From IMG/VR virus record IMGVR_UViG_3300042923_000281, positions 124,001-188,000 of that record: a stretch of DNA of 64,000 nucleotides; one strand, 5' to 3'. Both the position numbers and the translations under genes were made by a program. The first letter of the stretch is position 1. The number at the start of each line of letters is the position of its first letter. Of the stretch, positions 9,495-22,738 are shown piece after piece. The notes beneath the pieces are model-generated. The model was not told the DNA's origin, did no database searches, and saw nothing but the letters and a program-made list of their open reading frames with translations.

Positions 9495-9526
9495 TCGTTT
9501 GAGTAAAATCAAATCCACTATAAACA

Positions 9527-9553
9527 GGGGATACAGGCCACGGCCTGTATCCC
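9527..9553. terminator. strong hairpin in the divergent intergenic region
   Basis: GGGATACAGGCC-AC-GGCCTGTATCCC followed by T-rich sequence on the + strand. Confidence 0.55.
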
Positions 9554-9688
9554 TTCCTTATTTGCTTTATATCTTTTATAGGTACTTACCGTATCAGGGC
9601 ACGCCAAATGATGTGTAGCTGCTCTCTTTAATTCATCTCGATTTATCGAGTGTCAGCCGCTCTTTAAATCCACTTCGGGTATCAAGAC

Positions 9689-10204
9689 ATGTCTGACATT
9701 TCCCTGCTTTCCAAGGACCAAGTACTTGCCTTGGTCAACGAGCAAAACCCGGGCCTGAACCTTACGCACGAGAAAGTCACTTTCGGTGATCCTGTCGCAG
9801 CGTCTGGTGAAAACCCGGAACGTAACACTGAACTGGTCATGACCGGTATCCCGGGCAAGGGCTTCAAGAACACTGCCACCATCCTTTACAACCGGATCGA
9901 CTTGGCAGACTTCGAAGTTCAGATCCCATCGCAGATCCAAGTAGAAGGCGATGTGACCATCCAATCCATTCTGGATGGTTTCAACCTGTTCTACGGGGCG
10001 AACCTGCAACTGAACGACGTGCGTAGCGACCTCACGCTGCCCGGCGATCTGACCAGCACTCCGGAAGACTTCACCCTGATCGCCGCTGCGGGCTCCTACG
10101 CCTACCGTGGTCAGGTGGTCATCAGTATCCAGATGGCTGACCAAGACCTGAACGCTGCCGTCACCAAGAAAGTCCTGGATGGCTTGACGCTCTCCCTGAG
10201 CTAA
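9689..10204 (+). CDS. virion structural paralog (Ig-like tail/baseplate family, DUF7941-like)
   Basis: Family motif RNT.l...g..g.gf.....i.YNRiDL...A..GS.aY.G. Confidence 0.75.
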   Translation: MSDISLLSKDQVLALVNEQNPGLNLTHEKVTFGDPVAASGENPERNTELVMTGIPGKGFKNTATILYNRIDLADFEVQIPSQIQVEGDVTIQSILDGFNLFYGANLQLNDVRSDLTLPGDLTSTPEDFTLIAAAGSYAYRGQVVISIQMADQDLNAAVTKKVLDGLTLSLS

Positions 10205-10282
10205 TGGTGCTGGTAGTTGACCAGAACGCGCACTGGGGCCTTCGGGTCTCAGTGGCATTAGTCTCTTAACCGGGAAAGAATC

Positions 10283-11122
10283 ATGTCAATCTACAGTCAG
10301 TCGCCCGACCAGATGGTGCGCGAACTGATCAACAATGCCAACACCCCTCTCGTTCCCTTCGCTCCAGAGAACTTGACCTTCGGTACGCCCCAAGTTGTAA
10401 CGGGCAATCCTTCTGTCAACGCCACAGTGAAGGTGCGAGGTATCCAGGGTGAGGTCTACGCTGGTCAGGTTGCTATTTCGTACAATCGCTTGGACCTTGG
10501 TGTCCTGTACCGCGGTAACTACCGCCCAGAATTCACGGCGTTGGGTCAATCGACCCTCTATCGTCTATTGCCTGAGATCAACAAGGCCCTCGGCCTGAAC
10601 TTGACGAAGAACGACTTGATTGACGTCGACCTCAAGTTGTTGGAAGAAGGCGATCAGGTCAACCTTGAACTGCGTGCTAAGCCTGGCTCGTTGGCTTACA
10701 CCGGTCTGGCCACGATCTTGTTCAACCGTCGGCAGTTGATGCTCACGGACGTCTTGCCAGTGGAAGCGTTCGAAGAGTTCAAACACGCTGACCCAGTCCT
10801 TGAAGGTTATCAGAGCGCTGGTTTGCTTACTTGGGGGCAGGATTTCACGATCATTGCGCAGTACCTCAAGGTCAACCGTTACGGTAACAACTACAAGGGT
10901 AGCTGGATCGACGAAGCCGGGCTCAGAGCAGGCCTGGCTCAGTATTTCGGCATCGAGAATTGGCCGAGGATTGACACGAGTGCCAACTCCAAGATGACGA
11001 TCAGGGATTACGCCACGAAAGATCACCCGGATGCCAACCGTAACTACCAGCGGGTGGTGGTGCAAACCAGCCTGCGCAGCGACGGGTACTCCGGTACTGC
11101 TTTCTTCCACTATAACGCCTGA
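10283..11122 (+). CDS. virion structural paralog (N-domain plus C-terminal ..HYN domain)
   Basis: YNRLDL and GSLAYTG motifs; C-terminus PDAN..Y.RVVV...G..FFHYN. Confidence 0.75.
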   Translation: MSIYSQSPDQMVRELINNANTPLVPFAPENLTFGTPQVVTGNPSVNATVKVRGIQGEVYAGQVAISYNRLDLGVLYRGNYRPEFTALGQSTLYRLLPEINKALGLNLTKNDLIDVDLKLLEEGDQVNLELRAKPGSLAYTGLATILFNRRQLMLTDVLPVEAFEEFKHADPVLEGYQSAGLLTWGQDFTIIAQYLKVNRYGNNYKGSWIDEAGLRAGLAQYFGIENWPRIDTSANSKMTIRDYATKDHPDANRNYQRVVVQTSLRSDGYSGTAFFHYNA

Positions 11123-11135
11123 TCGGAGATGACTC

Positions 11136-11984
11136 ATGTCTCTTTATAAGAACCCCGTCACGACGCTTTTGAACGTCGTCGGGAGTTACAACGGGATCAC
11201 GCTCGATCCGGCTGACTTCGACTTCATCGATCCTCGGCCGAACACCAGCGGCAAGCATCCTGAGCAAAACTCCATCGTCACCATCAAGGCCAACAACGCC
11301 TTTGCCCCGTATCAGGGCGAGACCGTGGTGTACTACAACCGTCTGGACTTGGCTGACTTGGCGAAACTCGTCACGTTAACCATGAAGGCCCCAAGCGTCA
11401 CCAACTCCCACGACCTCCTGCCGTTCCTGAATGACCGTTTCGGTCTGAACCTGGAAGAGTCGGATCTGGAACTGGTTGATGCTGAAGACATGACCGATTA
11501 CAAGACCGTGCAACTGACGGCTGTACCGGGCAGTCTGGGTTGGATCGGCACTGTGTCCATTTCGGTGGCACAAGGTGACATCCCGCTGACCAACTACCTG
11601 ACGACCACTGCACTCAACGGTCTGAACTACCCAACGCCGTACGCTACCCTGCCGTTTGCGCAGATGTACAGCTACTGGCGTGACTTCTCGGCTCACGTGA
11701 ATTACCTGAAGACCATCACGGCTGGTCAGGCGATCCCACAAGAGCTGGCTGACATCCTCTCCAGCATCACTGGCGACGCATGGTTCCGTACTGGCTACCA
11801 TGAGTTCAGTCTGGGCGGTGCTCAGGTTGTGTGGGCTGGTAAAGCGGCTGACAACGGTCTGATGAACCCGTCGTACGACTACGGCATTCAGGTCCGTCTG
11901 AACCACGATGATGCGTTCGGTATCACTGGCGACTTGATCATTCACTTCAGCGATCCGGTTGACCCGTTCGCTCAGCCAGCGTGA
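11136..11984 (+). CDS. virion structural paralog
   Basis: YNRLDL, GSLGWIG, LNGLNYP motifs. Confidence 0.75.
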   Translation: MSLYKNPVTTLLNVVGSYNGITLDPADFDFIDPRPNTSGKHPEQNSIVTIKANNAFAPYQGETVVYYNRLDLADLAKLVTLTMKAPSVTNSHDLLPFLNDRFGLNLEESDLELVDAEDMTDYKTVQLTAVPGSLGWIGTVSISVAQGDIPLTNYLTTTALNGLNYPTPYATLPFAQMYSYWRDFSAHVNYLKTITAGQAIPQELADILSSITGDAWFRTGYHEFSLGGAQVVWAGKAADNGLMNPSYDYGIQVRLNHDDAFGITGDLIIHFSDPVDPFAQPA

Positions 11985-11992
11985 GGTGAGTC

Positions 11993-12796
11993 ATGGACGG
12001 ACGTGATCTGATTATCCAGATGGTCAACGAGCAGAACACTCTGTATCGGCCGATCACGCTGGACAACGTGGCGATGTCGCTGCCTGTAAAGAAAGGACAG
12101 AACGATCCGCGTAACACCGGGGTGACCCTCAGTGGCGTACACGGTAAGGGCTACAAAGGTCAGACGGAGATCTTCTACAACCGTCACGACTTGCCTGAGC
12201 TGTTTGGTGAAGCGGGCATCACGCCTAACCTTCGTCACAACGCTGAGATCACTCCAGCCTGGATCATCGACAAGTTGAACACCAAGTACGGCCTGTACCT
12301 TGAGGCCACGGACTTGAACAACATCGATGTCCCTATCTTCGACCAATTGGAAACTACCAAGCCCATCGAGATCGTCGTCAAAGACAACTCGTGGAACTGG
12401 GTCGGGACCATTACCCTCGAAATGACCTACGGCAACCCATTACTGGAAACCGTGGTCTTGGTACAGCTCCTGCCGATCCTGGAACACCCCACGGATCACA
12501 AAGAGCTTCGAGGTCGGAAGTCCGGGTACATGTGCACGTACAACTTCGACTTCACAGCCTATAAAGCTGACCTGCAACGTGACCCGAAGACTGGCCGTTG
12601 GGCTAACTTCGACTTGGTCATGGCCGCAGGCGCCAAAGCAGGTTTGCCCGCATGGGGTAATGCAGGCGGGATCGTCGACCTCCCAACCAGCGCAATGCCT
12701 GAAGCCAACCCGAAGTTTCAACGGGTGATGGTGCAGAGCTACGCGACCGGTGGTGTGGTAGGTCCGATCTTATTCCACTACGACCTGGACTGGTGA
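11993..12796 (+). CDS. virion structural paralog
   Basis: RNTGV..GKGYKG..YNRHDL; PEANPKFQRV..FHYD. Confidence 0.75.
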   Translation: MDGRDLIIQMVNEQNTLYRPITLDNVAMSLPVKKGQNDPRNTGVTLSGVHGKGYKGQTEIFYNRHDLPELFGEAGITPNLRHNAEITPAWIIDKLNTKYGLYLEATDLNNIDVPIFDQLETTKPIEIVVKDNSWNWVGTITLEMTYGNPLLETVVLVQLLPILEHPTDHKELRGRKSGYMCTYNFDFTAYKADLQRDPKTGRWANFDLVMAAGAKAGLPAWGNAGGIVDLPTSAMPEANPKFQRVMVQSYATGGVVGPILFHYDLDW

Positions 12797-12826
12797 TTCC
12801 TGTCCTTTCTTGAGAAGGTTTAGCTC

Positions 12827-13831
12827 ATGGCTATCTATAGCAAAACGACCAAGCAGATGATGGTCGATCTGATTAACGCAGGGAATCCGCAACTGCCATT
12901 CCCGATCAACGAGACGGACTTCGAGTTCGGTCTGCCGGAAGTCATCGCTGACCCAGGCAATGGCCACAACACTCGCATCCGGATCACTGCGAAACCGAAC
13001 ACCAACTACGTCGGCAACGTACAGCTTACCTATCGTCGTCTGGACGTGGGCCGTATCTTCCGCAACATGACGCTGGAAGTGTCTCGCTGGGTTGCCAACA
13101 CCGGCGCCAACGGTAGCCCTCTGATTCTGCTGAGTTCGCTGTACCCGCTTTATAGCGAGAAGTACGGTTTCAACTTCGCAGTGGGTGAATGGGGCGACGG
13201 TAACTTGAGTGGCCTCAATGGTATCCGCGGTGACGTGTTTAACATCGCGCCGATTGCCAACAACTTGGCTTTCGTGGGTAACGTGCAGGGCAAGTGGACC
13301 ATCGGTGAACGTACGCTGGAATCGCTACTGTCTGTAGACGTTGTTGCAGGTCGTCGCTACCCAGGCGGTAATGACTTCGTGACTCCGGGCCACAAGTACT
13401 GGGTCACCCCAGACGGCTTCGACATGGACTTCTCGGCATTCAAGGACACGCTGGAATCGGGTGTTGTGGCCACAGGCTACGCTGGCGGTATCCGTGCTAA
13501 CGTGTACGTGGGCGACAACTACGCTGACGGTAGCCAACCAATTCGTCAGATCATCGAGAACAACATTCTCAAGACGCTGAAGAACCGCAATGGCGATTTC
13601 TACACCATTGTAACGGCTGGCGGTCCTGCGGCTGTCACCGAAGCCATGACCACGCCATTCCGGTTGAACGGTGCGTACTTCCGTCGCTATGCCCTCCCGC
13701 ATGCTGACGTGCCAGAAGCCAACTCCGAGTTCTACAACCGTTGCTTGGTCATCAGTGTGAATGACGCCTTCGGTGGTCTGGGCCAGCGTGACTGGGGCAC
13801 TGGTCGCATCCTTCTCCACTACAACGTCTAA
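12827..13831 (+). CDS. virion structural paralog
   Basis: YRRLDV; LP..VPEAN..YNR.LVI...GRILLHYNV. Confidence 0.75.
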   Translation: MAIYSKTTKQMMVDLINAGNPQLPFPINETDFEFGLPEVIADPGNGHNTRIRITAKPNTNYVGNVQLTYRRLDVGRIFRNMTLEVSRWVANTGANGSPLILLSSLYPLYSEKYGFNFAVGEWGDGNLSGLNGIRGDVFNIAPIANNLAFVGNVQGKWTIGERTLESLLSVDVVAGRRYPGGNDFVTPGHKYWVTPDGFDMDFSAFKDTLESGVVATGYAGGIRANVYVGDNYADGSQPIRQIIENNILKTLKNRNGDFYTIVTAGGPAAVTEAMTTPFRLNGAYFRRYALPHADVPEANSEFYNRCLVISVNDAFGGLGQRDWGTGRILLHYNV

Positions 13832-13842
13832 GGGCAGGTGCC

Positions 13843-14721
13843 ATGACTATTCATTTCAACTCCAAGCAGAGTTTGGTGAACTACATCAACGCTGCTAACA
13901 GTTCACCACTGACCGTGGATGAGCTGGACTTTGGTACACCGCAGCCCACAGCAGGGACGTGGCGTGAAGGGTTGGTCAATGCCAACACCGCTATCAAGAT
14001 CACTGCTAAAGAAGCCTCGGTGTTCCAAGGTTCTCGCGTGATCTGCTACGACCGCCTGAACCTGCCGGATCTTTCGACCCTGGCCAACGGGCTGTCGGTC
14101 AAGTGCTACCAGCCTGCGACCAACTTCGACGTGCTGCCTGCGTTGTTCCGCCGTTACGGGATTGTGCTGAGTAAGGAAGACTTCATCGAAGAGCCTTTCG
14201 CTCACGATGGTGCTAACCCCACTCCGTGCGTGTTCAAAGCCAAGCCAGGTGCTATCGGCTGGACAGGTCAACTGACCGTCATGTCCCAGTCGGGCTCTGC
14301 GGTACTGGGCCAGCACTTGACTCAAGCAGCTCTGCCGGGGCTGAACTACCCAGTGACCGGTGACGGTTCTCAAGGTTCGGCACTGACTTACCTCTACGGG
14401 TATGATTTCACAGCGTACAAGTCGACGCTGGAGAACTACCAAGTGGGCACCAAGTTGGGTGCGGCTGATACAGCGCTTCTGGCTGCGATCAAGGCGATTG
14501 ACACCAACGCCGGTAAGTCGCTGTGGAACTTGGACCCGGCAAGCACTGCGTGGTCTCTGGAGGGCGCTGAGGTTGTCTACAGCGGTATCAACTCCAATGT
14601 CCTGCCAACTAACCAGTCGTACAAGTACGCACTCGGTCTGTTGCTCAAGGCGACCAACATCACGCCTCCGGGCGTGTGCTACCTCCACTACGACGATCCG
14701 TTCGATCCGAACGAGGTGTGA
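13843..14721 (+). CDS. virion structural paralog
   Basis: YDRLNL, GAIGWTG, LPGLNYP; C-terminus YLHYDDPFDP similar to 11136..11984. Confidence 0.75.
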   Translation: MTIHFNSKQSLVNYINAANSSPLTVDELDFGTPQPTAGTWREGLVNANTAIKITAKEASVFQGSRVICYDRLNLPDLSTLANGLSVKCYQPATNFDVLPALFRRYGIVLSKEDFIEEPFAHDGANPTPCVFKAKPGAIGWTGQLTVMSQSGSAVLGQHLTQAALPGLNYPVTGDGSQGSALTYLYGYDFTAYKSTLENYQVGTKLGAADTALLAAIKAIDTNAGKSLWNLDPASTAWSLEGAEVVYSGINSNVLPTNQSYKYALGLLLKATNITPPGVCYLHYDDPFDPNEV

Positions 14722-14767
14722 GTAAACGGCCCTAGGTAACTGGGGCCATCACAAAGGAAGACTGAAG

Positions 14768-15631
14768 ATGTCGTCTTACTACTCAAAACCTCAGGTCGAA
14801 CTGTTACTGAAGCTGATCAACGAGTCCAACCCAGGGCTGTTAGAGCTTCGTGACTTGGTGAACACTCGCCTCGGTGTGCCATTTGTACGCACGCCTGCTG
14901 CCGGTGAGATCCAGAACACGTCGTTGGAACTGTACGCACAACCCGGGTCATTCTACATCGGCAAGAAGATCGTTCACTATCGGCGAATCGATCTGAGCAA
15001 GCTGTTTGCCAACATGACGTTGGACATCGAGTACTGGGCTCCGGGCAACTTGCCTAAAGCCACGTGGATCGATTTGATCAACAAGAAGTACGGTCTGGCC
15101 TTGGTCGATGCTGACATGGCAGGCTACGGGGACATGGGCGAAACGACGTACGTCTTGAACCTGGCGGGTACTTCGCTGGGCTACAATGGTACGTTGCGGG
15201 TTCGTTGGACACGTGGCAAACGGGCCATGGACCAGATCTTGACAGTGGATCGGTACGCCGGTCTGTATTGGGATAGTTCCTATGTGCAAGGGAAGCCACT
15301 CATGACACCAGTGAACTTCAGTCTGGACTACAGTCGGTTCTTCAACATCGACACCATCACAAACGGGATCACGCTGAACAACGCAGGTGCGTACTACAGT
15401 GAGATCAAAACGATTGTGGACTGGTTCAACAAGTGCGCCGGTCTGGCCTTGGATCTGGGGGTCGATCACACGTTGCCAAATGGGCTCAAGGGCTTGACCA
15501 TGTCTCGCTTCACATTGCCCAACGTCAACGTGCCTGAAGCCAACGCTGCCAAGTTCAACCGTGTCTTGGTGATCTCCAGTCGGACCACCAGTTGGTTCGG
15601 TGGCAAGATCCTGCTGCACTACAACGTCTAA
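14768..15631 (+). CDS. virion structural paralog
   Basis: YRRIDL; VPEANAAKFNRVLVI..GKILLHYNV, closest to 12827..13831. Confidence 0.75.
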   Translation: MSSYYSKPQVELLLKLINESNPGLLELRDLVNTRLGVPFVRTPAAGEIQNTSLELYAQPGSFYIGKKIVHYRRIDLSKLFANMTLDIEYWAPGNLPKATWIDLINKKYGLALVDADMAGYGDMGETTYVLNLAGTSLGYNGTLRVRWTRGKRAMDQILTVDRYAGLYWDSSYVQGKPLMTPVNFSLDYSRFFNIDTITNGITLNNAGAYYSEIKTIVDWFNKCAGLALDLGVDHTLPNGLKGLTMSRFTLPNVNVPEANAAKFNRVLVISSRTTSWFGGKILLHYNV

Positions 15632-15642
15632 CGAGGACGCCC

Positions 15643-16128
15643 ATGGCTCTTATTCAAGGTTCGAAAGTTGACCTCGTGTCAGCATTGAACCGGGAGACGC
15701 CAGTCGCATTGGACTACGCTGGGTTGGTTTTCAGCCCAGTCGTACCGCTCCAGTCTGATCCGTCCGGCAAGTTGGTGAAGGTGCGCTTGTCGACACTTCC
15801 CACCTACACGTACAAGGGCAACGATGTCCTTGAATACAGCCGGCGTAATCTGGCCGATCTACCCGGTATCTTTCCGGTACTTCCACGCTGCGTCCCCGGT
15901 GCTACGCTGTACGCCATGCTGACGGCCTTGGCCGATGGGACCAGCATCCTGTTCACAACTGACGATCTCGAAGATGCACCGGTGGTCACCCGTCAAGACG
16001 GTAACTATCAAGTGCAGTTGACGGCGAAGGCAGGCTCGTATGCTTGGTACGGTACCGGCTTGTTGGTATTCCGCAACCTTCCTCACATTTCGTTGGCCAT
16101 CGTGGACAACAACCTCTCCTGGAGTTAA
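15643..16128 (+). CDS. virion structural paralog, N-domain only
   Basis: Start MALIQG with GAGGA RBS; YSRRNL and AKAGSYAWYG motifs. Confidence 0.75.
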   Translation: MALIQGSKVDLVSALNRETPVALDYAGLVFSPVVPLQSDPSGKLVKVRLSTLPTYTYKGNDVLEYSRRNLADLPGIFPVLPRCVPGATLYAMLTALADGTSILFTTDDLEDAPVVTRQDGNYQVQLTAKAGSYAWYGTGLLVFRNLPHISLAIVDNNLSWS

Positions 16129-16131
16129 GTG

Positions 16132-16476
16132 ATGACCATTAACTGGATCAACTACTTCTTTCACACGGACTTCAGTGAGCACGCTGAGACGCTGTCTCAG
16201 ATCCCCGTCACTGAAGAACTGGAACACGACCAGCGACTGGCTTTGGCCAGTATCCTGACCAGCACTGACAAAGGTGTGGGCAAGGACCTGTGGATCGTTG
16301 ACGGTTCGGGCAAAGAGTGGAACCTGAGCTTGGCCTCCGTGTTCTACAACGACCGCAACAGCACCCGGTTTGCCACGAACTCCAAGTACAGCCACGTGCT
16401 GATCTTGGCATTCAGTTCTGAGTCGGAAGGTCCGACTGGCAAGCTCTACCTTCAATACAACCGCGAGGTGGTGTAA
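16132..16476 (+). CDS. virion structural paralog, C-domain only
   Basis: YFFHTDFS...WNLS...N.KY..L...GKLYLQYN matches the C-domains of 11136 and 13843; own GGAG RBS. Confidence 0.7.
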   Translation: MTINWINYFFHTDFSEHAETLSQIPVTEELEHDQRLALASILTSTDKGVGKDLWIVDGSGKEWNLSLASVFYNDRNSTRFATNSKYSHVLILAFSSESEGPTGKLYLQYNREVV

Positions 16477-16478
16477 TC

Positions 16479-18101
16479 ATGTCCGTACCCTTGATGTTCG
16501 GATTTGACACCCTGCCGCTTCGCACAGGGTTGTACGCAGCACACATGAAGGCCGAAGGGTTCGATCAACTCGATCTCATCTCGACCAACGCTGCTTGGCA
16601 GACCACCAAGATCAATGGTCGGACGTGGCTGACTGCTCAACAGACCTACTACGCTCCCAATGGCTCGCTGGTAAGCCGATCGTTCTGGCTGATGACTCGT
16701 ACGTTAGGCGAACTCTTTGGTAACCCGACACCGCTGACAAAGGGTGTCCTTGGTCTGCGTATCTGGGTCGATCAAAACCTCATTGATCGGTTAGCCGCAG
16801 GATCAGTAGGTACTTATCTGCTGGGTATTAACGGTGCGCCTATCGATGGACCGCTCCTGAGTAAGCTCACAGTGGGTGAACACTTTGTTGAGTACGAAAT
16901 CGACTTCGTAGCCAATACGGTCAAAACCTACTACGACGCTAGCTTGGTCAACACGTACCAGGCTGCTGGACAGCTGCTATTCACACACGCGATGACGTTG
17001 GGCTTCAGCGGGACCGGGTATCAGAATTTGCCCACAGTAAACATGCTGAGCTTTAACGACATCTACACCACTTACGATCTTCAGGATGGAGACATTTCTG
17101 GGAGGTTGGGTCCGGTGAAGGTGTTGCCGATGGTAGTGGACAAGTCTACCCGTCCGGCCAACTGGTCGTACGCTGACACAGACGCCATGTACAACTACTT
17201 CGATTGGGATCAAGATGCCACGGCGGGGTTGTTCACCGGCCATTGCTTGATCCCACGGTTCACCAGTGAAATCGACGTAGCTGGACAGTTCAAATGGGAC
17301 ACTGCACCGCTCAGTACCTCCCCCACGATCTTCCAGCGTTTCAACCCACCGACGGGTGCCGGTGATTCGTGGGCTGCCCCAGCTGCCGCCACGAAGATCA
17401 TTGCCAACATTACCTTTGAACGGGCGAAGAAGGCAGTAGGTTACAGCCTGAATGGCTACAGCAACGGTTACGGGGCGTTCGACGACTGGACCTTTGAGGG
17501 CAGTAACGATGGCCAAGCCTGGACTGTTCTTGACACACGGGTAGGTTGTGCTACAAAGATCCAATTGGGCACCAAGACGTACGCCTTCAAGATCGACCCG
17601 GTCAAGGTGGGCAGTTATCGCTACTTCCGTTGGAATGTGTCGAAGGTACTCGTTGCCCCTCAACAAGCCGGTCGCGTGTACATGGGTCACTTCCAAATCT
17701 TGGGTGATCCGGCAGATGCTGCTTTGAACGGGATTTACGACGGTCTGACCCGCAGTCCGAACACGTCACAAGGCGACATGGACTATCCAGTGGTCCGTAC
17801 CGGCATTGACGGCAGCGAAGGGTCGTTCGGGTTCAAGGTTCCAGACACCGGCACCAGTCAGATCTTGGCCGTGCGCATGGGTGTGACGGGTCGTCGTGAT
17901 CAGGCCAGTTCTGAACACATGCGTGCACGCTTGAAAGTCGGTGAAGCCGTTACTCCTGAACGCGTCATTGAACTCAAGCCTCACGTTGAGCGCCATGAAC
18001 TGTTCCCGACCGTGACCAAAGCGCCGGACGGGACTGCTTGGACCAAAGCGAGCCTGGAAAGTCTTCAGGTTGTCATTAAATCGAAAAGTGGAGCCAAGTA
18101 A
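16479..18101 (+). CDS. tail fibre/receptor-binding-type protein with lectin-like N-domain and inserted F5/8 (discoidin) domain
   Basis: WTFEGSNDGQAWTVLD...YRYFRW discoidin signature; RLGP linker and C-domain shared with the next gene. Confidence 0.7.
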   Translation: MSVPLMFGFDTLPLRTGLYAAHMKAEGFDQLDLISTNAAWQTTKINGRTWLTAQQTYYAPNGSLVSRSFWLMTRTLGELFGNPTPLTKGVLGLRIWVDQNLIDRLAAGSVGTYLLGINGAPIDGPLLSKLTVGEHFVEYEIDFVANTVKTYYDASLVNTYQAAGQLLFTHAMTLGFSGTGYQNLPTVNMLSFNDIYTTYDLQDGDISGRLGPVKVLPMVVDKSTRPANWSYADTDAMYNYFDWDQDATAGLFTGHCLIPRFTSEIDVAGQFKWDTAPLSTSPTIFQRFNPPTGAGDSWAAPAAATKIIANITFERAKKAVGYSLNGYSNGYGAFDDWTFEGSNDGQAWTVLDTRVGCATKIQLGTKTYAFKIDPVKVGSYRYFRWNVSKVLVAPQQAGRVYMGHFQILGDPADAALNGIYDGLTRSPNTSQGDMDYPVVRTGIDGSEGSFGFKVPDTGTSQILAVRMGVTGRRDQASSEHMRARLKVGEAVTPERVIELKPHVERHELFPTVTKAPDGTAWTKASLESLQVVIKSKSGAK

Positions 18102-18103
18102 TC

Positions 18104-19165
18104 ATGGCGATCAAAGAAATCCTGGGTACTGACGATCTTCCTATCGCTGCCCGATGGCCCACACTGAACCTGTTGTGCAAAGGTGTCATGCCTCAGGTTA
18201 ACCAAGGGCTCACTTCAGCCAACACTGGTGCGGTCGTCAACAACGGCCGTAACTGGATCAAGGTCACCGGCAACGCCAACCAGAGCCTCACAACACTCTT
18301 GTCGACGATGAAATACAGTGTCGCTGAGATGCGTGCCAAAAAGATCTGGATTGGCTTCCGGTATCAGATTGGCAGTAACGCAGCAGCACTGTCGGCGAAC
18401 GCGATCCTGAACATAAACACTGTAGGCTCTGCTGGTTCTTTCAACCCGGTACTTGAGTCAGACCTTCAGCGCGCTACCGATGAGGTGTTCATCGAATGTC
18501 TGATTGACTTGGTCGCTCAGAAGATCGACGGTTATCTGGACGGTAACTTGGTGCGTTCGGTGTCGACTTCTGCATTGGTTCCAGCCAACCTGACGGACAT
18601 CCGTATCAACTACGGCCAGACTTCCGGTGCAGTGGTGGCCGAAGTCCACATGTACACCGACTTCTACTGGTTGGTGGACTCGAGCGATGTGGATCAGTTG
18701 CCATCGAACCGTCTGGGTCCGATCAAGATCAAGACGGCCAAGGTTGCAGGTTCTGTATTGCCAAGCGACTGGACCGTTCCAGAAGGTCAGACAGCAGACG
18801 GCATTCTTGATGCGAGTACCATGGCTCCGACGACTGAACTCACTCCGGTGATTCGTACGTCGCCTGCCGAATCGGTGGCTTCGATTGGTTTCGCCAAGCC
18901 CGCTGCTGAGCTGGCGATCAAGGCTGTGTCGATCGAGGTGTTCGGTTATCGCGACACCGGTACGGCTCCAACCCTGCAAGCGCAATTGAAGCAGGGTGCC
19001 AAGACCGATACCAAGAAGACCTTCAGCACGCCAACGTTGGATTACAACCGCGGTGCGGCCAGTGACCGTCTGGGGTGCTTCAACGTGGATCTCAATGGCG
19101 CTGCTTGGAACAACGACAGCATCGACTCCCTTGAAGTTCTCATCAACTCCAAAACCGGGGCGTAA
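18104..19165 (+). CDS. tail-associated protein, paralog of 16479..18101 without the discoidin insert
   Basis: Shared D.Y....D...RLGP.K and G.AW....L.V.I.SK.GA motifs. Confidence 0.7.
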   Translation: MAIKEILGTDDLPIAARWPTLNLLCKGVMPQVNQGLTSANTGAVVNNGRNWIKVTGNANQSLTTLLSTMKYSVAEMRAKKIWIGFRYQIGSNAAALSANAILNINTVGSAGSFNPVLESDLQRATDEVFIECLIDLVAQKIDGYLDGNLVRSVSTSALVPANLTDIRINYGQTSGAVVAEVHMYTDFYWLVDSSDVDQLPSNRLGPIKIKTAKVAGSVLPSDWTVPEGQTADGILDASTMAPTTELTPVIRTSPAESVASIGFAKPAAELAIKAVSIEVFGYRDTGTAPTLQAQLKQGAKTDTKKTFSTPTLDYNRGAASDRLGCFNVDLNGAAWNNDSIDSLEVLINSKTGA

Positions 19166-19170
19166 CTATC

Positions 19171-20688
19171 ATGAGCGAAGCGGCTAATCTGAGGACGGTG
19201 CGCGTTCAATACCTTGTCCTCGATGACTCGCCGACTAAGTTCAGGGACACTCGGCTTCAATATACTGGCGATGGGGATAACCCCGCCAGTATCCGCCGCA
19301 TCAACGGCCAAGCTCTTATCATTGATCGCAACCCTCTGAACGTGCGTAGTGCACGGATGCAGTTCTCAGAGGACATCCAAAACCCGGCGAGTATTCGTCG
19401 GGTGACGGGTCAGGTCTTGATCATCGACAAGAGTCCAGTCAGCGTACGCGATGTACGGATGCAGTATTCGAGTGACCAGAGCAGTCCGGCCAGTTTGCGA
19501 CGGTTGAATGGCTTCGTCATGACCCGCACGGTTGATGGACAACCTGTAAAGGCATTGCGTCTCCAGTATCTGGAAGTGGTCAACGATCCACCGCGGTTTG
19601 GCATTGACCCATGGGTCCGCCTGATCACGGCTATCAACGGTAACAACAACACCCGTTTTATCCCGGCACACTTCACGCACGGTAATCCCGAGCCAAGCAC
19701 AGTGCCGAACAAATGGAACACCCAGATGGAGATCACGGCGCTGCCTGCCTCCGGATTCTCTGGGTCCATGAAGATTCACTTCCAGCGTTATGCGGTGGGC
19801 AAGATCTTCGATGGAAAGACTGCCGTGCTGGATCTGAATGGTAAGGTTGGTACTCATGACCTGATCCCTCAGATCAACGCAGCCTTCGGCACGACCTTTG
19901 TTCCGAACGATCTGGATGACGTCCCGATTGATCACGCTCGCAACCAATTCACGCTGCGCATTGCCAGCAACAGTTGGTTCTTCATCCCCGGCAGTGAAAC
20001 CGTCTACCAGAACGTGGCAGACCTCTCGCTGTTGTACAAGACTGTTGACTTGCCAGGGTTCGTCAAGAACACCGGTCCGTTGTCGGTTGTGGGGGCGAAG
20101 GAGAAAGTCAACGGCATTTACCCAGTCCGGGCAGATGACGGTACGACGTTCAATGCGTACGTGGACATGACCACCGATGGCGGTTACTGGGTACTGTTGG
20201 CAGACTGGACAGGGAACATGGGAACCACACTGTCGTACAACGAGACTATTGTACGCGGTGGGGCGTTGAGAGGCTGGTCGCGCGATGCGGTCAACCGCCC
20301 AGCAATTCCAGCCGGGAAGATCCTGAACAACCAAGCGTCGAGCTGGATGTTCCAATCTGACAACGCTACTTGGAAGACCTTATTCGGCGCTTACCAGAAG
20401 GCAGCTCCGATCGACCCTGTACCGCTCACATCGGCAGGTCTTGTGGTCGATACGCCAGAAGGTCGTCGTCAAGTGTTCGGTATCCGTTCGGGTTGGTCAG
20501 CAGACACTACATTGAACCTTGCCTTCGGTTTCTGGAGTGCGTGGGCCAACGTGGGTGGTTGTGGTGGTGCCAACGTCTTCGGTACAACCCGTGAATGCCC
20601 TGTGGCAGACGCTGGTGCGTACGCAGGACATGGGGACTACGTCTCGAACAAGCGCTTGTTTGTTCGTGCTGCGTCTTACAACCTGTAA
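19171..20688 (+). CDS. tail protein: N-terminal repeats, paralog domain and fibrinogen-like C-domain
   Basis: ~17-aa R..R.QY / SIRR..G repeats; WNT...LPASGFSG..FQRY; NGIY...AYVDMTTDGGYW. Confidence 0.7.
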   Translation: MSEAANLRTVRVQYLVLDDSPTKFRDTRLQYTGDGDNPASIRRINGQALIIDRNPLNVRSARMQFSEDIQNPASIRRVTGQVLIIDKSPVSVRDVRMQYSSDQSSPASLRRLNGFVMTRTVDGQPVKALRLQYLEVVNDPPRFGIDPWVRLITAINGNNNTRFIPAHFTHGNPEPSTVPNKWNTQMEITALPASGFSGSMKIHFQRYAVGKIFDGKTAVLDLNGKVGTHDLIPQINAAFGTTFVPNDLDDVPIDHARNQFTLRIASNSWFFIPGSETVYQNVADLSLLYKTVDLPGFVKNTGPLSVVGAKEKVNGIYPVRADDGTTFNAYVDMTTDGGYWVLLADWTGNMGTTLSYNETIVRGGALRGWSRDAVNRPAIPAGKILNNQASSWMFQSDNATWKTLFGAYQKAAPIDPVPLTSAGLVVDTPEGRRQVFGIRSGWSADTTLNLAFGFWSAWANVGGCGGANVFGTTRECPVADAGAYAGHGDYVSNKRLFVRAASYNL

Positions 20689-20694
20689 GCAAAT

Positions 20695-20731
20695 CGGCAT
20701 ATTCGGGAGGGCTTCGGCCCTCCCTTATTTT
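20695..20731 (+). terminator. intrinsic terminator with CGGCATA on its 5' flank
   Basis: GGGAGGGC-TTCG-GCCCTCCC-TTATTTT. Confidence 0.85.
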
Positions 20732-20817
20732 GCTGGACCCATCGTGTAATTTTTTACGACCTATCCTATGAGGTCAGGAATTCTTGATCTTTTCGTAAAC
20801 CTGCATCGGAGATCGCC

Positions 20818-21354
20818 ATGCAAATTGACATCCTCAAAAGTGGCCAAGAGAACTTCTTGCTGTTGGCTAACACTGCTAACAGCCAGACTCTGACTGCTGC
20901 TCAAATGACCATCGGCGCGCCTCAGGTGTTCGATGATCCTGAAGACACCAACCAGCGCAACACCCAGGTCACCATCTCGGCTCTGCCGGGCTCGACCGAG
21001 TTCAAGGGCGCGCAGACCCTGCGTTACACCCGTCTGGACGTGGCTGCACTTGTTGGCGCAAGCTACGAGTTCCAGACCACCGAAGAAAGCACCATCGCCG
21101 ACGTACTGGCCGCTGTTGCTGCTGCCAAAGGCCTGATCGCTGCCGATCTCGAAATCACCGAGACCGAAATGCCGACTTGGGACGACGGTACTGTGGACGG
21201 CGAAACCGCTCCACTGACCCTGAAGGCCAAGGCTGGTTCGTACGCCTACATCGGTACCGTGACCATCAACGTGATCGAGCCAGTTGATGGCCGTGAGCGC
21301 TTCGCTGACCTGTACGCCGTACAGGACCTGGACGGTTTCGAAGCTCAGGCTTAA
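20818..21354 (+). CDS. virion structural paralog (N-domain only)
   Basis: RNTQV..LPGS..FKG..YTRLDV; AKAGSYAYIG; ends LDGF. Confidence 0.8.
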   Translation: MQIDILKSGQENFLLLANTANSQTLTAAQMTIGAPQVFDDPEDTNQRNTQVTISALPGSTEFKGAQTLRYTRLDVAALVGASYEFQTTEESTIADVLAAVAAAKGLIAADLEITETEMPTWDDGTVDGETAPLTLKAKAGSYAYIGTVTINVIEPVDGRERFADLYAVQDLDGFEAQA

Positions 21355-21371
21355 TCCCGTACTTGCAGCAC

Positions 21372-21406
21372 AGAGCGAGGGCCATCGGCCCTCGCTCTTT
21401 ATGCCG
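21372..21406 (+). terminator. hairpin plus TTATGCCG between convergent genes
   Basis: AGAGCGAGGGCC-ATC-GGCCCTCGCTCT-TTATGCCG. Confidence 0.8.
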
Positions 21407-21613
21407 TTAGCCCAGAAGATTGAGGATGAGACCATCCAGCGTCTTATTGGTCATGGCAGTGCTCAGATCAACGTCACCGTTGTCATTAGGCATCTCCCAC
21501 GGAACCCACTTGCCGTCAATCTTGTTGTAGCCTTGCAGTACGTTTCGGTAAGTACCCTCGACCCTGACAGCAACACCAGTGGATTCGGGGTACGTTCCTT
21601 GTTTAATCCGCAT
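21407..21613 (-). CDS. small tail-fibre-associated protein
   Basis: V.V.G.Y...Y.KIDGKW beta motif; C-terminal LSTAMTNKTLDGL shared with the paralog array. Confidence 0.65.
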   Translation of the reverse strand: MRIKQGTYPESTGVAVRVEGTYRNVLQGYNKIDGKWVPWEMPNDNGDVDLSTAMTNKTLDGLILNLLG

Positions 21614-21625
21614 GACGCACCTCGC

Positions 21626-21877
21626 TTATTGCTGAGGCGGCTGAATGGTCAGCCAGATGTCACCATCGTTGCCAACAGCGTTGTCAGGTTGTTGGGTGCT
21701 GACATGCAGGTCACGCATGGCCATGGACTTGACACCAGCGAGCTTGTCTTTCTCTTCGGTGGTGTAATCTTCAGTAGAGAGTTGTTTACCCTCAACCTTG
21801 TCGACCTTGCCGCCCAGTGCTTGCAGGACTAGACCCGCATAGCGACTGATGGACGCTTTGATAGCAGTGATGTTCAT
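21626..21877 (-). CDS. small tail-fibre-like protein
   Basis: KVDKVEGKQLSTEDYTTEEKDKLAG and GNDGDIW motifs typical of phage fibre modules. Confidence 0.7.
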   Translation of the reverse strand: MNITAIKASISRYAGLVLQALGGKVDKVEGKQLSTEDYTTEEKDKLAGVKSMAMRDLHVSTQQPDNAVGNDGDIWLTIQPPQQ

Positions 21878-22291: not shown

Positions 22292-22738
22292 TTATGCCGA
22301 TTCGAAGTGACTGGCAGCGAACCACCGGACACCGTAGAAGAACATCCCTGCACGCCAACGGGCAATGCCTTCACCACGAAGAGCACGGTAGAAGATCTCG
22401 TCAGCTTGTTGGCGAGTCACCTTGACCTGTTCACCATTGACGGTAATGGTACCGCCACTGTATAGCCAGTCATGGATCGTTGCCGCCATGTCCCCGTAAT
22501 CAGCCAGCAAGGCGTACACAGGGAATAACACAATATTACGCAAGGCATCCAGCGATGCGTAGTTGGTCTTGAATCCCTTCGGCACCGTGATGGTTCCGTA
22601 GACTTCATCATCGAAGCTGAAGTCCGCGAGCATCAGGTACTCACGCTTACCCACCTGACGCGTGTCGAAGTTGGAGAAGCGTTTGAAGTATTTCACTTCA
22701 GCCGGGGTGTCTGTAAATTGGGGAAGTGGAATATCCAT
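22292..22738 (-). CDS. DUF1353-family protein
   Basis: ITVPKGFKTNYAS, AATIHDWLY, R.QAD.IF..AL...W....Y.GVR motifs. Confidence 0.8.
   Translation of the reverse strand: MDIPLPQFTDTPAEVKYFKRFSNFDTRQVGKREYLMLADFSFDDEVYGTITVPKGFKTNYASLDALRNIVLFPVYALLADYGDMAATIHDWLYSGGTITVNGEQVKVTRQQADEIFYRALRGEGIARWRAGMFFYGVRWFAASHFESA

What the first reader, a model, noticed from the sequence alone, without database searches (positions are those of the whole stretch)
9689..21613. Array of about 11 paralogous virion proteins sharing a short LxGL 'plug' strand: a modular fibre system
Ten genes share an N-domain (NT..a.pg..y.G...YxRxdL...A..GS..y.G), and 16132 carries only a C-domain. In most copies the N-domain is followed by a short motif: LNAAVTKKVLDGL, LTNYLTTTALNGL, LGQHLTQAALPGL, LSLLYKTVDLPGF, FADLYAVQDLDGF. 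The same motif ends the otherwise unrelated 68-aa opposite-strand gene 21407..21613 (LSTAMTNKTLDGL). C-domains fall into subfamilies (..HYNV; ..DPF; none; fibrinogen-like). Inference: subunits link by strand donation into branched or chained fibres with interchangeable tips.
Basis: partly seen in the sequence, partly recalled or inferred. Interest (0 to 1): 0.6.

Follow-up and report, generated by a model that had tools for sequence, protein, structure and literature searches.

The report
Jumbo-phage DUF7941 fibre proteins plus adaptor
The array is this uncultured nucleus-forming jumbo phage's set of DUF7941 virion proteins, a family already proposed in 2026 to chain head-to-tail into host-finding filaments. 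The one new point is that a small unrelated 68-residue protein carries the same docking tail and is predicted to plug into the family's receiving domain.

Summary
Ten genes between 9689 and 21354 carry the N-domain of Pfam DUF7941 (PF25613), and 16132 encodes a free C-domain. The genome is a 277-kb phage with a chimallin homologue and holds 16 such genes.

The family is known:
- It is SPN3US "paralog family B" (mass spectrometry, 2016-17).
- It includes phiKZ gp126 and gp127; the gp127 N-domain is modelled in the outer baseplate (PDB 9xqd).
- It includes Goslar gp22 and gp23.

The linker of one subunit docks on the N-domain of the next, giving filaments decorated with sugar-binding tips.

New here:
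- The 68-aa minus-strand protein shares the 20-residue tail of the 171-aa short form (60% identity, E 8e-5). A complex model docks that tail on the family's YxRxDL strand (score 0.76; best control 0.03).
- The N/C split is a conserved two-gene arrangement.
- The copy number is fixed across relatives, and the lectin-like members diverge fastest.

Verdict: a new instance of a known system with one plausible new component, of moderate interest. All docking evidence is computational.

The parts
9689..10204 (+). Short-form DUF7941 protein of 171 aa: N-domain (residues 1-150) plus a 20-residue docking tail. It has the same architecture as Goslar gp23 and SPN3US gp160.
   Evidence: Pfam E 1.5e-29. 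There are 28 orthologues of about 170 aa. Tail residues D151, D153, A157, G165, L166 and L168 are invariant among them. AF2 monomer model: N-domain pLDDT 85-91, tail falling from 78 to 49.
9851..9913 (+). Predicted acceptor site on the 171-aa protein (residues 55-75). It covers the family hallmark G..Y.G...I.YxRxDL.
   Evidence: The complex model puts tail contacts on residues 51-53, 55-71 and 74-75, among others. R69 is invariant, and Y67 and G61 are nearly invariant, across the paralogues.
10139..10201 (+). Donor tail of the 171-aa protein (residues 151-171).
   Evidence: Reciprocal best hit with the tail of the 68-aa protein, E 8e-5.
10283..11122 (+). Two-domain DUF7941 protein (279 aa) with a degenerate linker motif.
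   Evidence: Pfam E 4.3e-45, profile positions 1-276.
11136..11984 (+). Two-domain DUF7941 protein (282 aa) with an L-x-G-L linker and a DPxDP C-terminal extension.
   Evidence: Pfam E 1.1e-52. Profile match to phiKZ gp127, PDB 9xqd, E 8e-9.
11993..12796 (+). Two-domain DUF7941 protein (267 aa).
   Evidence: Pfam E 3.6e-42.
12827..13831 (+). Two-domain DUF7941 protein (334 aa) with insertions.
   Evidence: Pfam E 1.2e-30.
13843..14721 (+). Two-domain DUF7941 protein (292 aa) with an L-x-G-L linker.
   Evidence: Pfam E 4.5e-51.
14768..15631 (+). Two-domain DUF7941 protein (287 aa).
   Evidence: Pfam E 4.6e-31.
15643..16128 (+). N-half of a split DUF7941 gene (161 aa). It ends exactly at a variant tail motif, L-x-W-[SN].
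   Evidence: Pfam profile positions 8-167. The variant ending is conserved in orthologues.
16132..16476 (+). C-half of the split gene: a free-standing DUF7941 C-domain (114 aa) with its own ribosome-binding site (GGAG) and ATG.
   Evidence: Pfam profile positions 186-275. The junction in three phages is stop plus 2-3 nt plus ATG. It uses TAA or TGA and is out of frame in one phage. The gene is split in all five related genomes.
16479..18101 (+). 540-aa non-DUF7941 protein with a discoidin-like (F5/8 type C) insert. It is the fastest-diverging gene of the block and a candidate receptor binder.
   Evidence: phrog_17517 'tail protein' E 1.5e-12. F5_F8_type_C E 0.006, below threshold. 38% identity to its orthologue where conserved genes are 72-85%.
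18104..19165 (+). 353-aa paralogue of the 540-aa protein, without the insert.
   Evidence: BLASTP E 2e-10 and 1e-7 over two blocks.
19171..20688 (+). 505-aa protein in four parts: 34-residue N-terminal repeats, a DUF7941 N-domain (residues 151-301), an L-x-G-F linker, and a probable fibrinogen-related or intelectin-like lectin domain.
   Evidence: Pfam DUF7941 E 3.4e-16. PDB phmmer hits XEEL and intelectin-1, E 0.0018. Atlas look-alike clusters carrying Fibrinogen_C score 0.95-0.96. Pfam Fibrinogen_C E 0.086, below threshold.
20705..20724 (+). Terminator-like GC hairpin followed by a T-run, after the 505-aa gene.
   Evidence: Consensus scan.
20818..21354 (+). Short-form DUF7941 protein (178 aa) with an L-D-G-F tail.
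   Evidence: Pfam E 3.1e-21. The tail is conserved in orthologues.
21372..21398 (.). 12-bp GC-rich hairpin between the converging gene sets. It is probably a two-way terminator.
   Evidence: Read from the sequence. The scan did not flag it, because it has no T-run.
21407..21613 (-). 68-aa protein. Residues 1-43 form a KV-x-G-x-W hairpin-repeat module. Residues 47-68 (21410-21475) are a DUF7941-type donor tail.
   Evidence: It has the ribosome-binding site GAGGTG. Homologues in 50%-identity clusters keep the tail in 4 of 5. The tail docks on the N-domain in the complex model. It always lies next to the 83-aa gene and near DUF7941 genes.
21626..21877 (-). 83-aa protein carrying the widespread tail-fibre repeat motif. 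It is the conserved upstream partner of the 68-aa gene.
   Evidence: phrog_18608 E 1.3e-12, plus tail-fibre PHROGs. tblastn hits to annotated tail-fibre proteins of unrelated phages.

Best explanation
The block is the main gene cluster for the DUF7941 filament system of an uncultured chimallivirus (a nucleus-forming jumbo phage).

How it works. Each member has a self-folding N-domain whose conserved G..Y.G...YxRxDL surface is an acceptor. Most members follow it with a donor peptide of about 20 residues, D-x-D-L...L-x-G-[LF]. The donor of one subunit lies along the acceptor of the next, so subunits chain head to tail.

Roles within the set.
- Short forms (171 and 178 aa) and two-domain forms are chain links.
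- Members without a tail can only end a chain. These are the 147-aa gene at genome 74.2 kb and the second half of the tandem protein.
- The intelectin-like 505-aa protein is a likely sugar-binding tip. The neighbouring discoidin-like 540-aa protein, which is not a family member, is another candidate receptor binder of the block.
- The 68-aa protein is not a family member but carries the donor peptide of the 171-aa link. It most likely plugs into a free acceptor as an adaptor. Its hairpin-repeat head would then root a chain on another virion part, possibly together with the 83-aa fibre-like partner.

Shown: family membership, motif statistics, conservation, and synteny.
Shown by model only: trans docking of the tail.
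Inferred: chain formation in this phage, the tip roles, and adaptor rather than cap.
For: Family and fold. Pfam and PHROG matches. There are 16 matches in the 277-kb genome. A profile of the paralogues hits phiKZ gp127, PDB 9xqd, at E 8e-9. The model of the tandem member has gp127's N-domain as its only significant PDB fold match (E 8e-7, TM 0.71). A chimallin homologue is present (E 4.7e-20).

Published mechanism for the family. Goslar AF3 head-to-tail models, gp22 filaments, and a gp126-gp127 pair fitted into the phiKZ baseplate map. gp127 lies in the phiKZ outer baseplate.

- The two tails match at E 8e-5.
- All six invariant tail residues of the 171-aa orthologues are shared by the 68-aa protein.
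- The shared consensus holds in both proteins across all five genomes compared.
- The DNA of the two tails is 38/60 identical, with 9/20 at third positions, so this is not a recent copy.
- Complex model: score 0.76 in three runs, best of three controls 0.03, partner pLDDT at least 64, and at least 95% contact agreement. The interface is partner residues 44-67 on the conserved strand. The tool states that 58 of 80 solved complexes and 2 of 110 mismatched pairs reached this mark. Those counts hold only roughly here, because my own alignments were used.
- The monomer tail has low confidence, whereas the fusion-protein linker has pLDDT 93-95.

Tip candidates diverge fastest: 38-43% identity against 72-85% for the conserved genes.
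Against: - No experiment exists for this phage. The docking is a model's confidence, not a measurement.
- Only one pair could be tested, and no DUF7941-DUF7941 pair from this phage was.
- The acceptor actually used by the 68-aa tail is unknown among 16 N-domains.
- The generic linker profile finds the 68-aa protein only at E 0.48.
- One distant homologue (P0067) lacks the tail.
- No homologue of the 68-aa protein occurs in cultured phages.
- Location is contested. In SPN3US this family was still found in particles of a tailless mutant and was therefore called 'head'.
- Coordinates of the models could not be inspected, so cis docking of the linker in the fusion protein is inferred from pLDDT alone.
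Confidence: 0.7

Rival explanations
1. The 68-aa protein docks as predicted, but it works as an assembly cap or chaperone. It would block the acceptor of the abundant 171-aa link in the cytoplasm, so that chains do not form too early or grow too long. It would be absent from, or scarce in, the virion.
For: The docking result is the same one. A tail-only protein can fill an acceptor but cannot extend a chain. The gene lies downstream of a DUF1353 / phrog_1158 'tail assembly chaperone' gene.
Against: Two terminator-like hairpins separate it from the DUF1353 gene. Its conserved partner is a fibre-like 83-aa protein. Its N-terminal hairpin repeats recur in longer proteins of unknown role in the protein library, which suggests an attachment module rather than a free cap.
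Confidence: 0.2
2. The motif is only an intramolecular linker that packs on its own chain. The 68-aa similarity would then be a relic of an old gene-fragment transfer without function, and the proteins would not polymerise.
For: In two-domain members the motif sits between two domains of one chain. The monomer model gives the first half of the free tail a moderate pLDDT of 78.
Against: Tail residues are at least as conserved as the folded domain: 6 invariant of 18 against 30 of 150. The tail is kept at protein level in both proteins across five genomes while third codon positions have randomised. Short forms end with the tail and have nothing to link. Trans docking scores 0.76 against 0.03. 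Goslar gp22 forms filaments.
Confidence: 0.07
3. The family is a head-associated or ejected protein set, not baseplate filaments for host finding.
For: SPN3US paralog family B (gps 83, 138-154, 161, 237) was detected in a tailless mutant and assigned to the head. gp141 and gp160 were estimated at more than 300 copies and annotated 'Head ejection?'. The hits of this window's proteins fall in SPN3US genes 0140 and 0144 of that array, and Pfam finds 17 matches there. PHROG files the family under 'head and packaging'.
Against: phiKZ gp127 is modelled in the outer baseplate. Members here and in Goslar are fused to lectin-type domains, which make no sense inside a capsid. Self-assembled filaments could co-purify with tailless heads.
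Confidence: 0.15

Closest known systems
Goslar DUF7941 'fiber cloud' (gp22, gp23 and eight paralogues; bioRxiv 10.64898/2026.04.21.720040)
   Same: Same Pfam family and same architectures: N-domain plus linker; N-domain plus linker plus C-domain; N-domain plus linker plus sugar-binding domain. Both are chimallivirus genomes. The proposed linker-on-N-domain head-to-tail contact is the same.
   Different: There are 16 genes here against 10 in Goslar. This phage also has a non-family protein with the donor tail, a conserved split N/C gene pair, a tandem N-domain fusion, and an intelectin-like tip. None of these is mentioned in the passages of the preprint that I searched.
phiKZ gp126, gp127 and gp143 (PDB 9xqd; Nat Commun 2026, PMC13250141)
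   Same: The N-domain fold matches. gp127 is N-domain-linker-C-domain. gp126 is an N-domain with no tail, like the 147-aa gene here. The gp143 C-terminal repeats resemble those of the gene at genome 101.0 kb. The gp128-like gene followed by DUF7941 genes is a synteny kept here, at genome 70.9-75.7 kb.
   Different: phiKZ has three members against 16 here. Its linker has no G in the L-x-G-[LF] position. No tail-only protein is known there.
SPN3US 'paralog family B' (Thomas et al. 2016 and 2017; PMC5105663, PMC5694885)
   Same: It is the same family. It also forms a long tandem array, with an abundant short form of 18.5 kDa and an abundant two-domain form of 32.6 kDa. The L-[DNST]-G-[LF] tails are conserved.
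   Different: It was assigned to the head from a tailless mutant, and no mechanism was proposed. It has up to 20 members, so 16 is not exceptional.
Chaperone-usher pilus donor-strand exchange
   Same: It works alike in outline. A short terminal peptide of one subunit occupies a site on the next, giving polar chains. A non-polymerising protein can also occupy the site.
   Different: This system is not a member. The N-domain is not an Ig fold lacking a strand, and it folds confidently alone. Its only PDB fold match is phiKZ gp127. No usher or periplasmic chaperone is involved.

Membership tests
Pfam DUF7941 (PF25613) / SPN3US paralog family B | Match to the family profile above the gathering score | tested here: met
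   Eleven genes in the window score 31.8-179.6 bits against a cut-off of 27. The genome has 16 matches.
Pfam DUF7941 (PF25613) / SPN3US paralog family B | N-domain fold as in phiKZ gp127 (PDB 9xqd) | tested here: met
   The tandem member model (pLDDT 90) matches 9xqd_0 at E 8e-7 and TM 0.71, with no other significant match. Only this member's fold was searched.
Chimallivirus DUF7941 filament system | Encoded by a chimallivirus | tested here: met
   A 645-aa ORF at genome 243041-244837 is 24% identical to phiKZ gp54 over 600 residues, E 4.7e-20. An RNA polymerase beta-type fragment is also present.
Chimallivirus DUF7941 filament system | The linker or tail of one chain docks on the N-domain of another | tested here: inconclusive
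   A model supports it for the 68-aa tail on the 171-aa N-domain (0.76 against 0.03). No DUF7941-DUF7941 pair of this phage could be run, because the cap is one job.
Chimallivirus DUF7941 filament system | Filament formation by purified protein | not testable with these tools
   Shown only for Goslar gp22.
Chimallivirus DUF7941 filament system | Presence in the virion | not testable with these tools
   Homologues were found by mass spectrometry in SPN3US and Goslar and are modelled in phiKZ. There are no data for this uncultured phage.
Fibrinogen-related domain / intelectin (C-end of the 505-aa protein) | Match to Fibrinogen_C or to solved FReD lectins | tested here: inconclusive
   Pfam E 0.086, below the cut-off. 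PDB XEEL E 0.0018 over 34 residues. Atlas look-alikes score 0.95-0.96, with Fibrinogen_C in 12-42% of members.
Chaperone-usher donor-strand system | Acceptor is an incomplete Ig-like fold that needs the donated strand | tested here: not met
   The N-domain has pLDDT 85-91 without the tail. The fold search gave no Ig-type match.

The most novel reading that the evidence does not exclude
The 20-residue donor tail is a portable plug that proteins outside the family can carry. The 68-aa protein would be a dedicated adaptor that roots a DUF7941 chain on another virion part, or caps the chain. Such heterologous donors could then be how these filament clouds are anchored in general. A weak second example fits this. 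SPN3US gp82 is the homologue of the phiKZ baseplate wedge protein gp128. It ends in a tail like that of its neighbour gp83.
Probability: 0.4. Interest if true: 0.6.

Novelty: new variant of a known kind. Interest (0 to 1): 0.42.

Why it matters
The DUF7941 filament cloud is a months-old proposal. How its chains are started, ended and fixed to the virion is open, and even its location (baseplate or head) is disputed. A small, easily expressed protein that carries only the donor peptide gives a direct handle on this. It defines the minimal docking peptide and the acceptor surface, and it offers a test of whether outside proteins can join or block the chains. The fixed one-to-one gene set in relatives suggests a defined architecture rather than a pool of interchangeable parts, with only the lectin-like members evolving fast.

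Tried and rejected
- Megablast of the block against GenBank phages gave no match. tblastn of the 68-aa protein there also gave none.
- The 540-aa and 353-aa proteins are not detectable homologues of the phiKZ spoke protein gp139 (E 0.2). They have no phiKZ match at all.
- Stop-codon read-through or a sequencing error as the cause of the N/C split is rejected. The stop is TAA here and TGA in relatives. An ATG with a Shine-Dalgarno sequence follows. In one lineage the halves are out of frame.
- A recent DNA duplication as the source of the shared tail is rejected, because third-position identity is 9/20.
- The gp128-like protein of this phage (genome 70916-73264) has no convincing tail.
- No tRNA genes and no notable tandem DNA repeats were found.
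- Co-variation between the tails and the acceptor was not attempted, because there are too few paired genomes.

Full report
WHAT THE WINDOW IS. The window is bases 124001-188000 of a 276,978-bp IMG/VR virus record with direct terminal repeats. The genome encodes a homologue of the phiKZ nuclear-shell protein chimallin (645-aa ORF, 24% identity over 600 residues, E 4.7e-20). It also has an RNA polymerase beta-type fragment. It is therefore an uncultured chimallivirus. No near-identical DNA exists among GenBank phages. The nearest cultured relatives at protein level are Burkholderia phage FLC9 (40%) and the Erwinia and Salmonella SPN3US-like jumbo phages (about 33%).

On the plus strand between 9689 and 21354 lie eleven genes that match Pfam DUF7941 (PF25613) above its cut-off. 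They also match PHROG phrog_1037 'virion structural protein'.
- Seven cover the whole 276-position profile, meaning N-domain, linker and C-domain.
- Two are short forms with an N-domain plus about 20 residues (171 and 178 aa).
- One (505 aa) has the N-domain in its middle.
- One (16132-16476) is a C-domain alone.
- Two genes inside the span, of 540 and 353 aa, are not members. They are paralogues of each other, and the longer one carries a discoidin-like insert.
- Five more member genes lie outside the window, at genome 73.2-75.7 kb, 99.0 kb and 101.0 kb. The genome total is 16 genes.

THE MOTIF. It corresponds to profile positions of roughly 150-175.

THE 68-AA GENE. I made a six-frame set of 2014 ORFs from the phage. 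Within it, the last 20 residues of the 171-aa protein and of the 68-aa protein (21407-21613, minus strand) are reciprocal best hits. They are 60% identical without gaps, both lie at the very C-terminus, and E is 8e-5. The next-best hits have E of 0.6-1. A generic HMM of ten paralogue linkers also ranks the 68-aa protein first among non-members, but only at E 0.48. The likeness is thus specifically to the short form.
- Twenty orthologues of the 171-aa protein, down to 46% identity, keep six tail residues invariant. All six are present in the 68-aa protein.
- In the five genomes compared, both proteins keep the consensus D-x-[DE]-[LI]-x2-A-[VIM]-x2-[KP]-x-L-[DN]-G-L-x-L.
- The DNA behind the two tails is 38/60 identical, with only 9/20 matches at third positions. 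The peptide is therefore maintained by selection and is not a recent copy.
- The gene has a good ribosome-binding site and is followed by a 12-bp hairpin.
- A profile search of 1.8 billion representatives found a small family. Four of the five small members keep an L-x-G-L tail and one lacks it.
- The N-terminal 40 residues resemble a KV-x-G-x-W hairpin repeat that recurs in many longer proteins.
- The gene always follows an 82-83-aa gene that carries the common tail-fibre repeat motif. The pair lies next to or near DUF7941 genes in every contig examined.

WHAT IS ALREADY KNOWN. The family is not new.
- A profile of the paralogues hits one solved chain, phiKZ gp127 (PDB 9xqd, E 8e-9). gp127 sits at the end of the gp139 band in the outer peripheral baseplate (PMC13250141).
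- The Goslar virion preprint (10.64898/2026.04.21.720040) names the DUF7941 family and lists ten Goslar paralogues, some fused to carbohydrate-binding, hydrolase or LRR domains.
- The preprint estimates about 2140 copies of gp23 and about 580 of gp22 per virion. It shows AlphaFold 3 head-to-tail dimers, in which the 'disordered linker' of one protomer docks on the N-domain of the next.
- It also shows filaments of purified gp22 and proposes a 'fiber cloud' for host recognition.
- The family is also SPN3US 'paralog family B', with up to 20 members found by mass spectrometry (PMC5105663 and PMC5694885).
- I confirmed this by mapping the hits to SPN3US_0140 and 0144 within the 0138-0154 array. 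Pfam finds 17 matches in that genome. Sixteen copies is therefore ordinary.
- The SPN3US authors placed the family in the head, because it persisted in a tailless mutant. The location remains in dispute.

TESTS OF THE MECHANISM.
1. Complex prediction. I modelled residues 1-150 of the 171-aa protein with the whole 68-aa protein, using my own alignments. The score was 0.76 (runs 0.75-0.77), and the best of three controls was 0.03. Partner pLDDT was at least 64, and the runs shared at least 95% of their contacts. The tool states that 58 of 80 solved complexes and 2 of 110 mismatched pairs reach this mark. Those counts hold only roughly with user alignments. The model supports binding; it does not show it. 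No like complex is solved, since 9xqd holds only the gp127 N-domain, so recall from memory is unlikely.
2. The interface. On the partner it is the tail only (residues 44, 46-51, 53-67). On the N-domain it centres on residues 55-71, 74-75 and 78-79. That is the family hallmark G..Y.G...YxRxDL, whose R69 is invariant among the paralogues. The register runs in parallel (60 with 49, 66 with 58, 70 with 64).
3. The monomer. Alone, the 171-aa protein folds with N-domain pLDDT of 85-91, while the tail falls from 78 to 65 to 49. The acceptor domain therefore does not need the peptide to fold, and the free tail is not confidently packed in cis.
4. A natural fusion. The protein at genome 73245-74225 is N-domain, L-x-G-F linker, N-domain. 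It was modelled with 25 homologues and gave pLDDT 90.2 and pTM 0.72, with the linker at 93-95. This is what one expects if the linker sits on the neighbouring N-domain. I could not inspect the coordinates, so that last step is an inference. Its only significant PDB fold match is gp127 (E 8e-7, TM 0.71).

THE PARTS LIST. Reading tails and N-domains across the 16 genes gives four classes:
- links with both acceptor and donor;
- acceptors without a donor, which can only end a chain. These are the 147-aa gene, the second half of the tandem protein, and phiKZ gp126;
- a donor without an acceptor, the 68-aa protein;
- a member whose linker is followed by a probable lectin.

In phiKZ the subunit nearest the baseplate (gp127) presents its N-domain to the baseplate and its linker outward to gp126. 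A tail-only protein would then sit at the root of a chain. I therefore favour an adaptor or anchor role, with a cap or chaperone as the main alternative.

THE SPLIT GENE. The frame 15643-16476 is interrupted by one TAA, followed by GTG and ATG and preceded by GGAG. Related phages have TGA-CAG-ATG in frame, or TGA-GC-ATG out of frame. All five related genomes are split at the same place. The N-half ends exactly at a conserved variant tail, L-x-W-[SN]. This is an old, maintained two-gene arrangement that yields a link and a free C-domain.

STABILITY AND DIVERGENCE. Four complete or nearly complete relatives have 16-17 matches each, and the array is collinear gene for gene. Identities to one relative's orthologues are as follows (the 171-aa value is):
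- links and neighbouring genes: 171-aa protein 85%, 282-aa protein 78%, 68-aa protein 76%, 850-aa neighbour 72%;
- tip candidates: 178-aa short form 48%, 505-aa lectin-like protein 43%, 540-aa discoidin-like protein 38%.

Tips therefore vary by sequence drift, not by swapping genes.

VERDICT. The additions are the heterologous tail donor with its predicted docking site, the conserved split, the tandem fusion and the intelectin-like tip. Everything about binding is computational.

Noticed in passing
window 15643-16476: One DUF7941 reading frame is split by a single stop into an N-domain-plus-tail gene and a free C-domain gene. The second has its own Shine-Dalgarno sequence and ATG. The split is conserved in all five related genomes, with different stop codons and, in one lineage, a different frame.
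   Followed up: yes
L003:48-1025 (genome 73245-74225, outside the window): This is a natural fusion of two DUF7941 N-domains joined by an L-x-G-F linker. The second N-domain has no tail. The model is confident (pLDDT 90) and the linker is ordered. The next gene (147 aa) is an N-domain with no tail, like phiKZ gp126.
   Followed up: partly
window 19171-19600: The 505-aa protein starts with four to five 34-residue repeats of the form R-x-Q-[YF]...P-A-S-[IL]-R-R-x-x-G. One orthologue has one repeat fewer (471 aa). No family match was found.
   Followed up: partly
window 20068-20688: The C-terminal domain of the 505-aa protein carries the fibrinogen-related / intelectin signature. Intelectins bind microbial sugars, so this is a plausible receptor-binding tip. 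All matches are below formal thresholds.
   Followed up: partly
window 16479-19165: Two paralogous non-DUF7941 proteins (540 and 353 aa) interrupt the array. The longer has a discoidin-like insert of about 180 residues and is the fastest-diverging gene of the block. Neither has a detectable phiKZ counterpart.
   Followed up: partly
L044:4728-6911 (SPN3US gp82, JN641803 80727-82910): SPN3US gp82 is homologous to the phiKZ baseplate wedge protein gp128 (29% over 640 residues). It ends in an L-x3-V-x4-M-x-G-F tail resembling that of the adjacent DUF7941 protein gp83 (blastp-short E 0.28). This is a weak hint of a second non-family tail donor. The gp128 homologue in this phage has no such tail.
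   Followed up: partly
genome 100918-101481 (minus strand, outside the window) and L017:21694-22227: One DUF7941 short form ends in repeats of the type R-I-T-D-E-G-x-[LI]-R instead of the L-x-G-L tail. phiKZ gp143 ends in similar Y-L-E-N-G repeats. This looks like a separate, conserved kind of C-terminal module.
   Followed up: no
window 22748-25300 (minus strand): The 850-aa virion protein is a homologue of phiKZ gp201 (E 1.4e-24). The searched text of the phiKZ structural atlas does not mention gp201. A DUF1353 'tail assembly chaperone'-like gene follows at 22292-22738.
   Followed up: partly
window 9526-9555 and 21372-21398: Strong GC-rich hairpins bound the block on both sides. One lies upstream of the first gene and one between the converging gene sets.
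   Followed up: no
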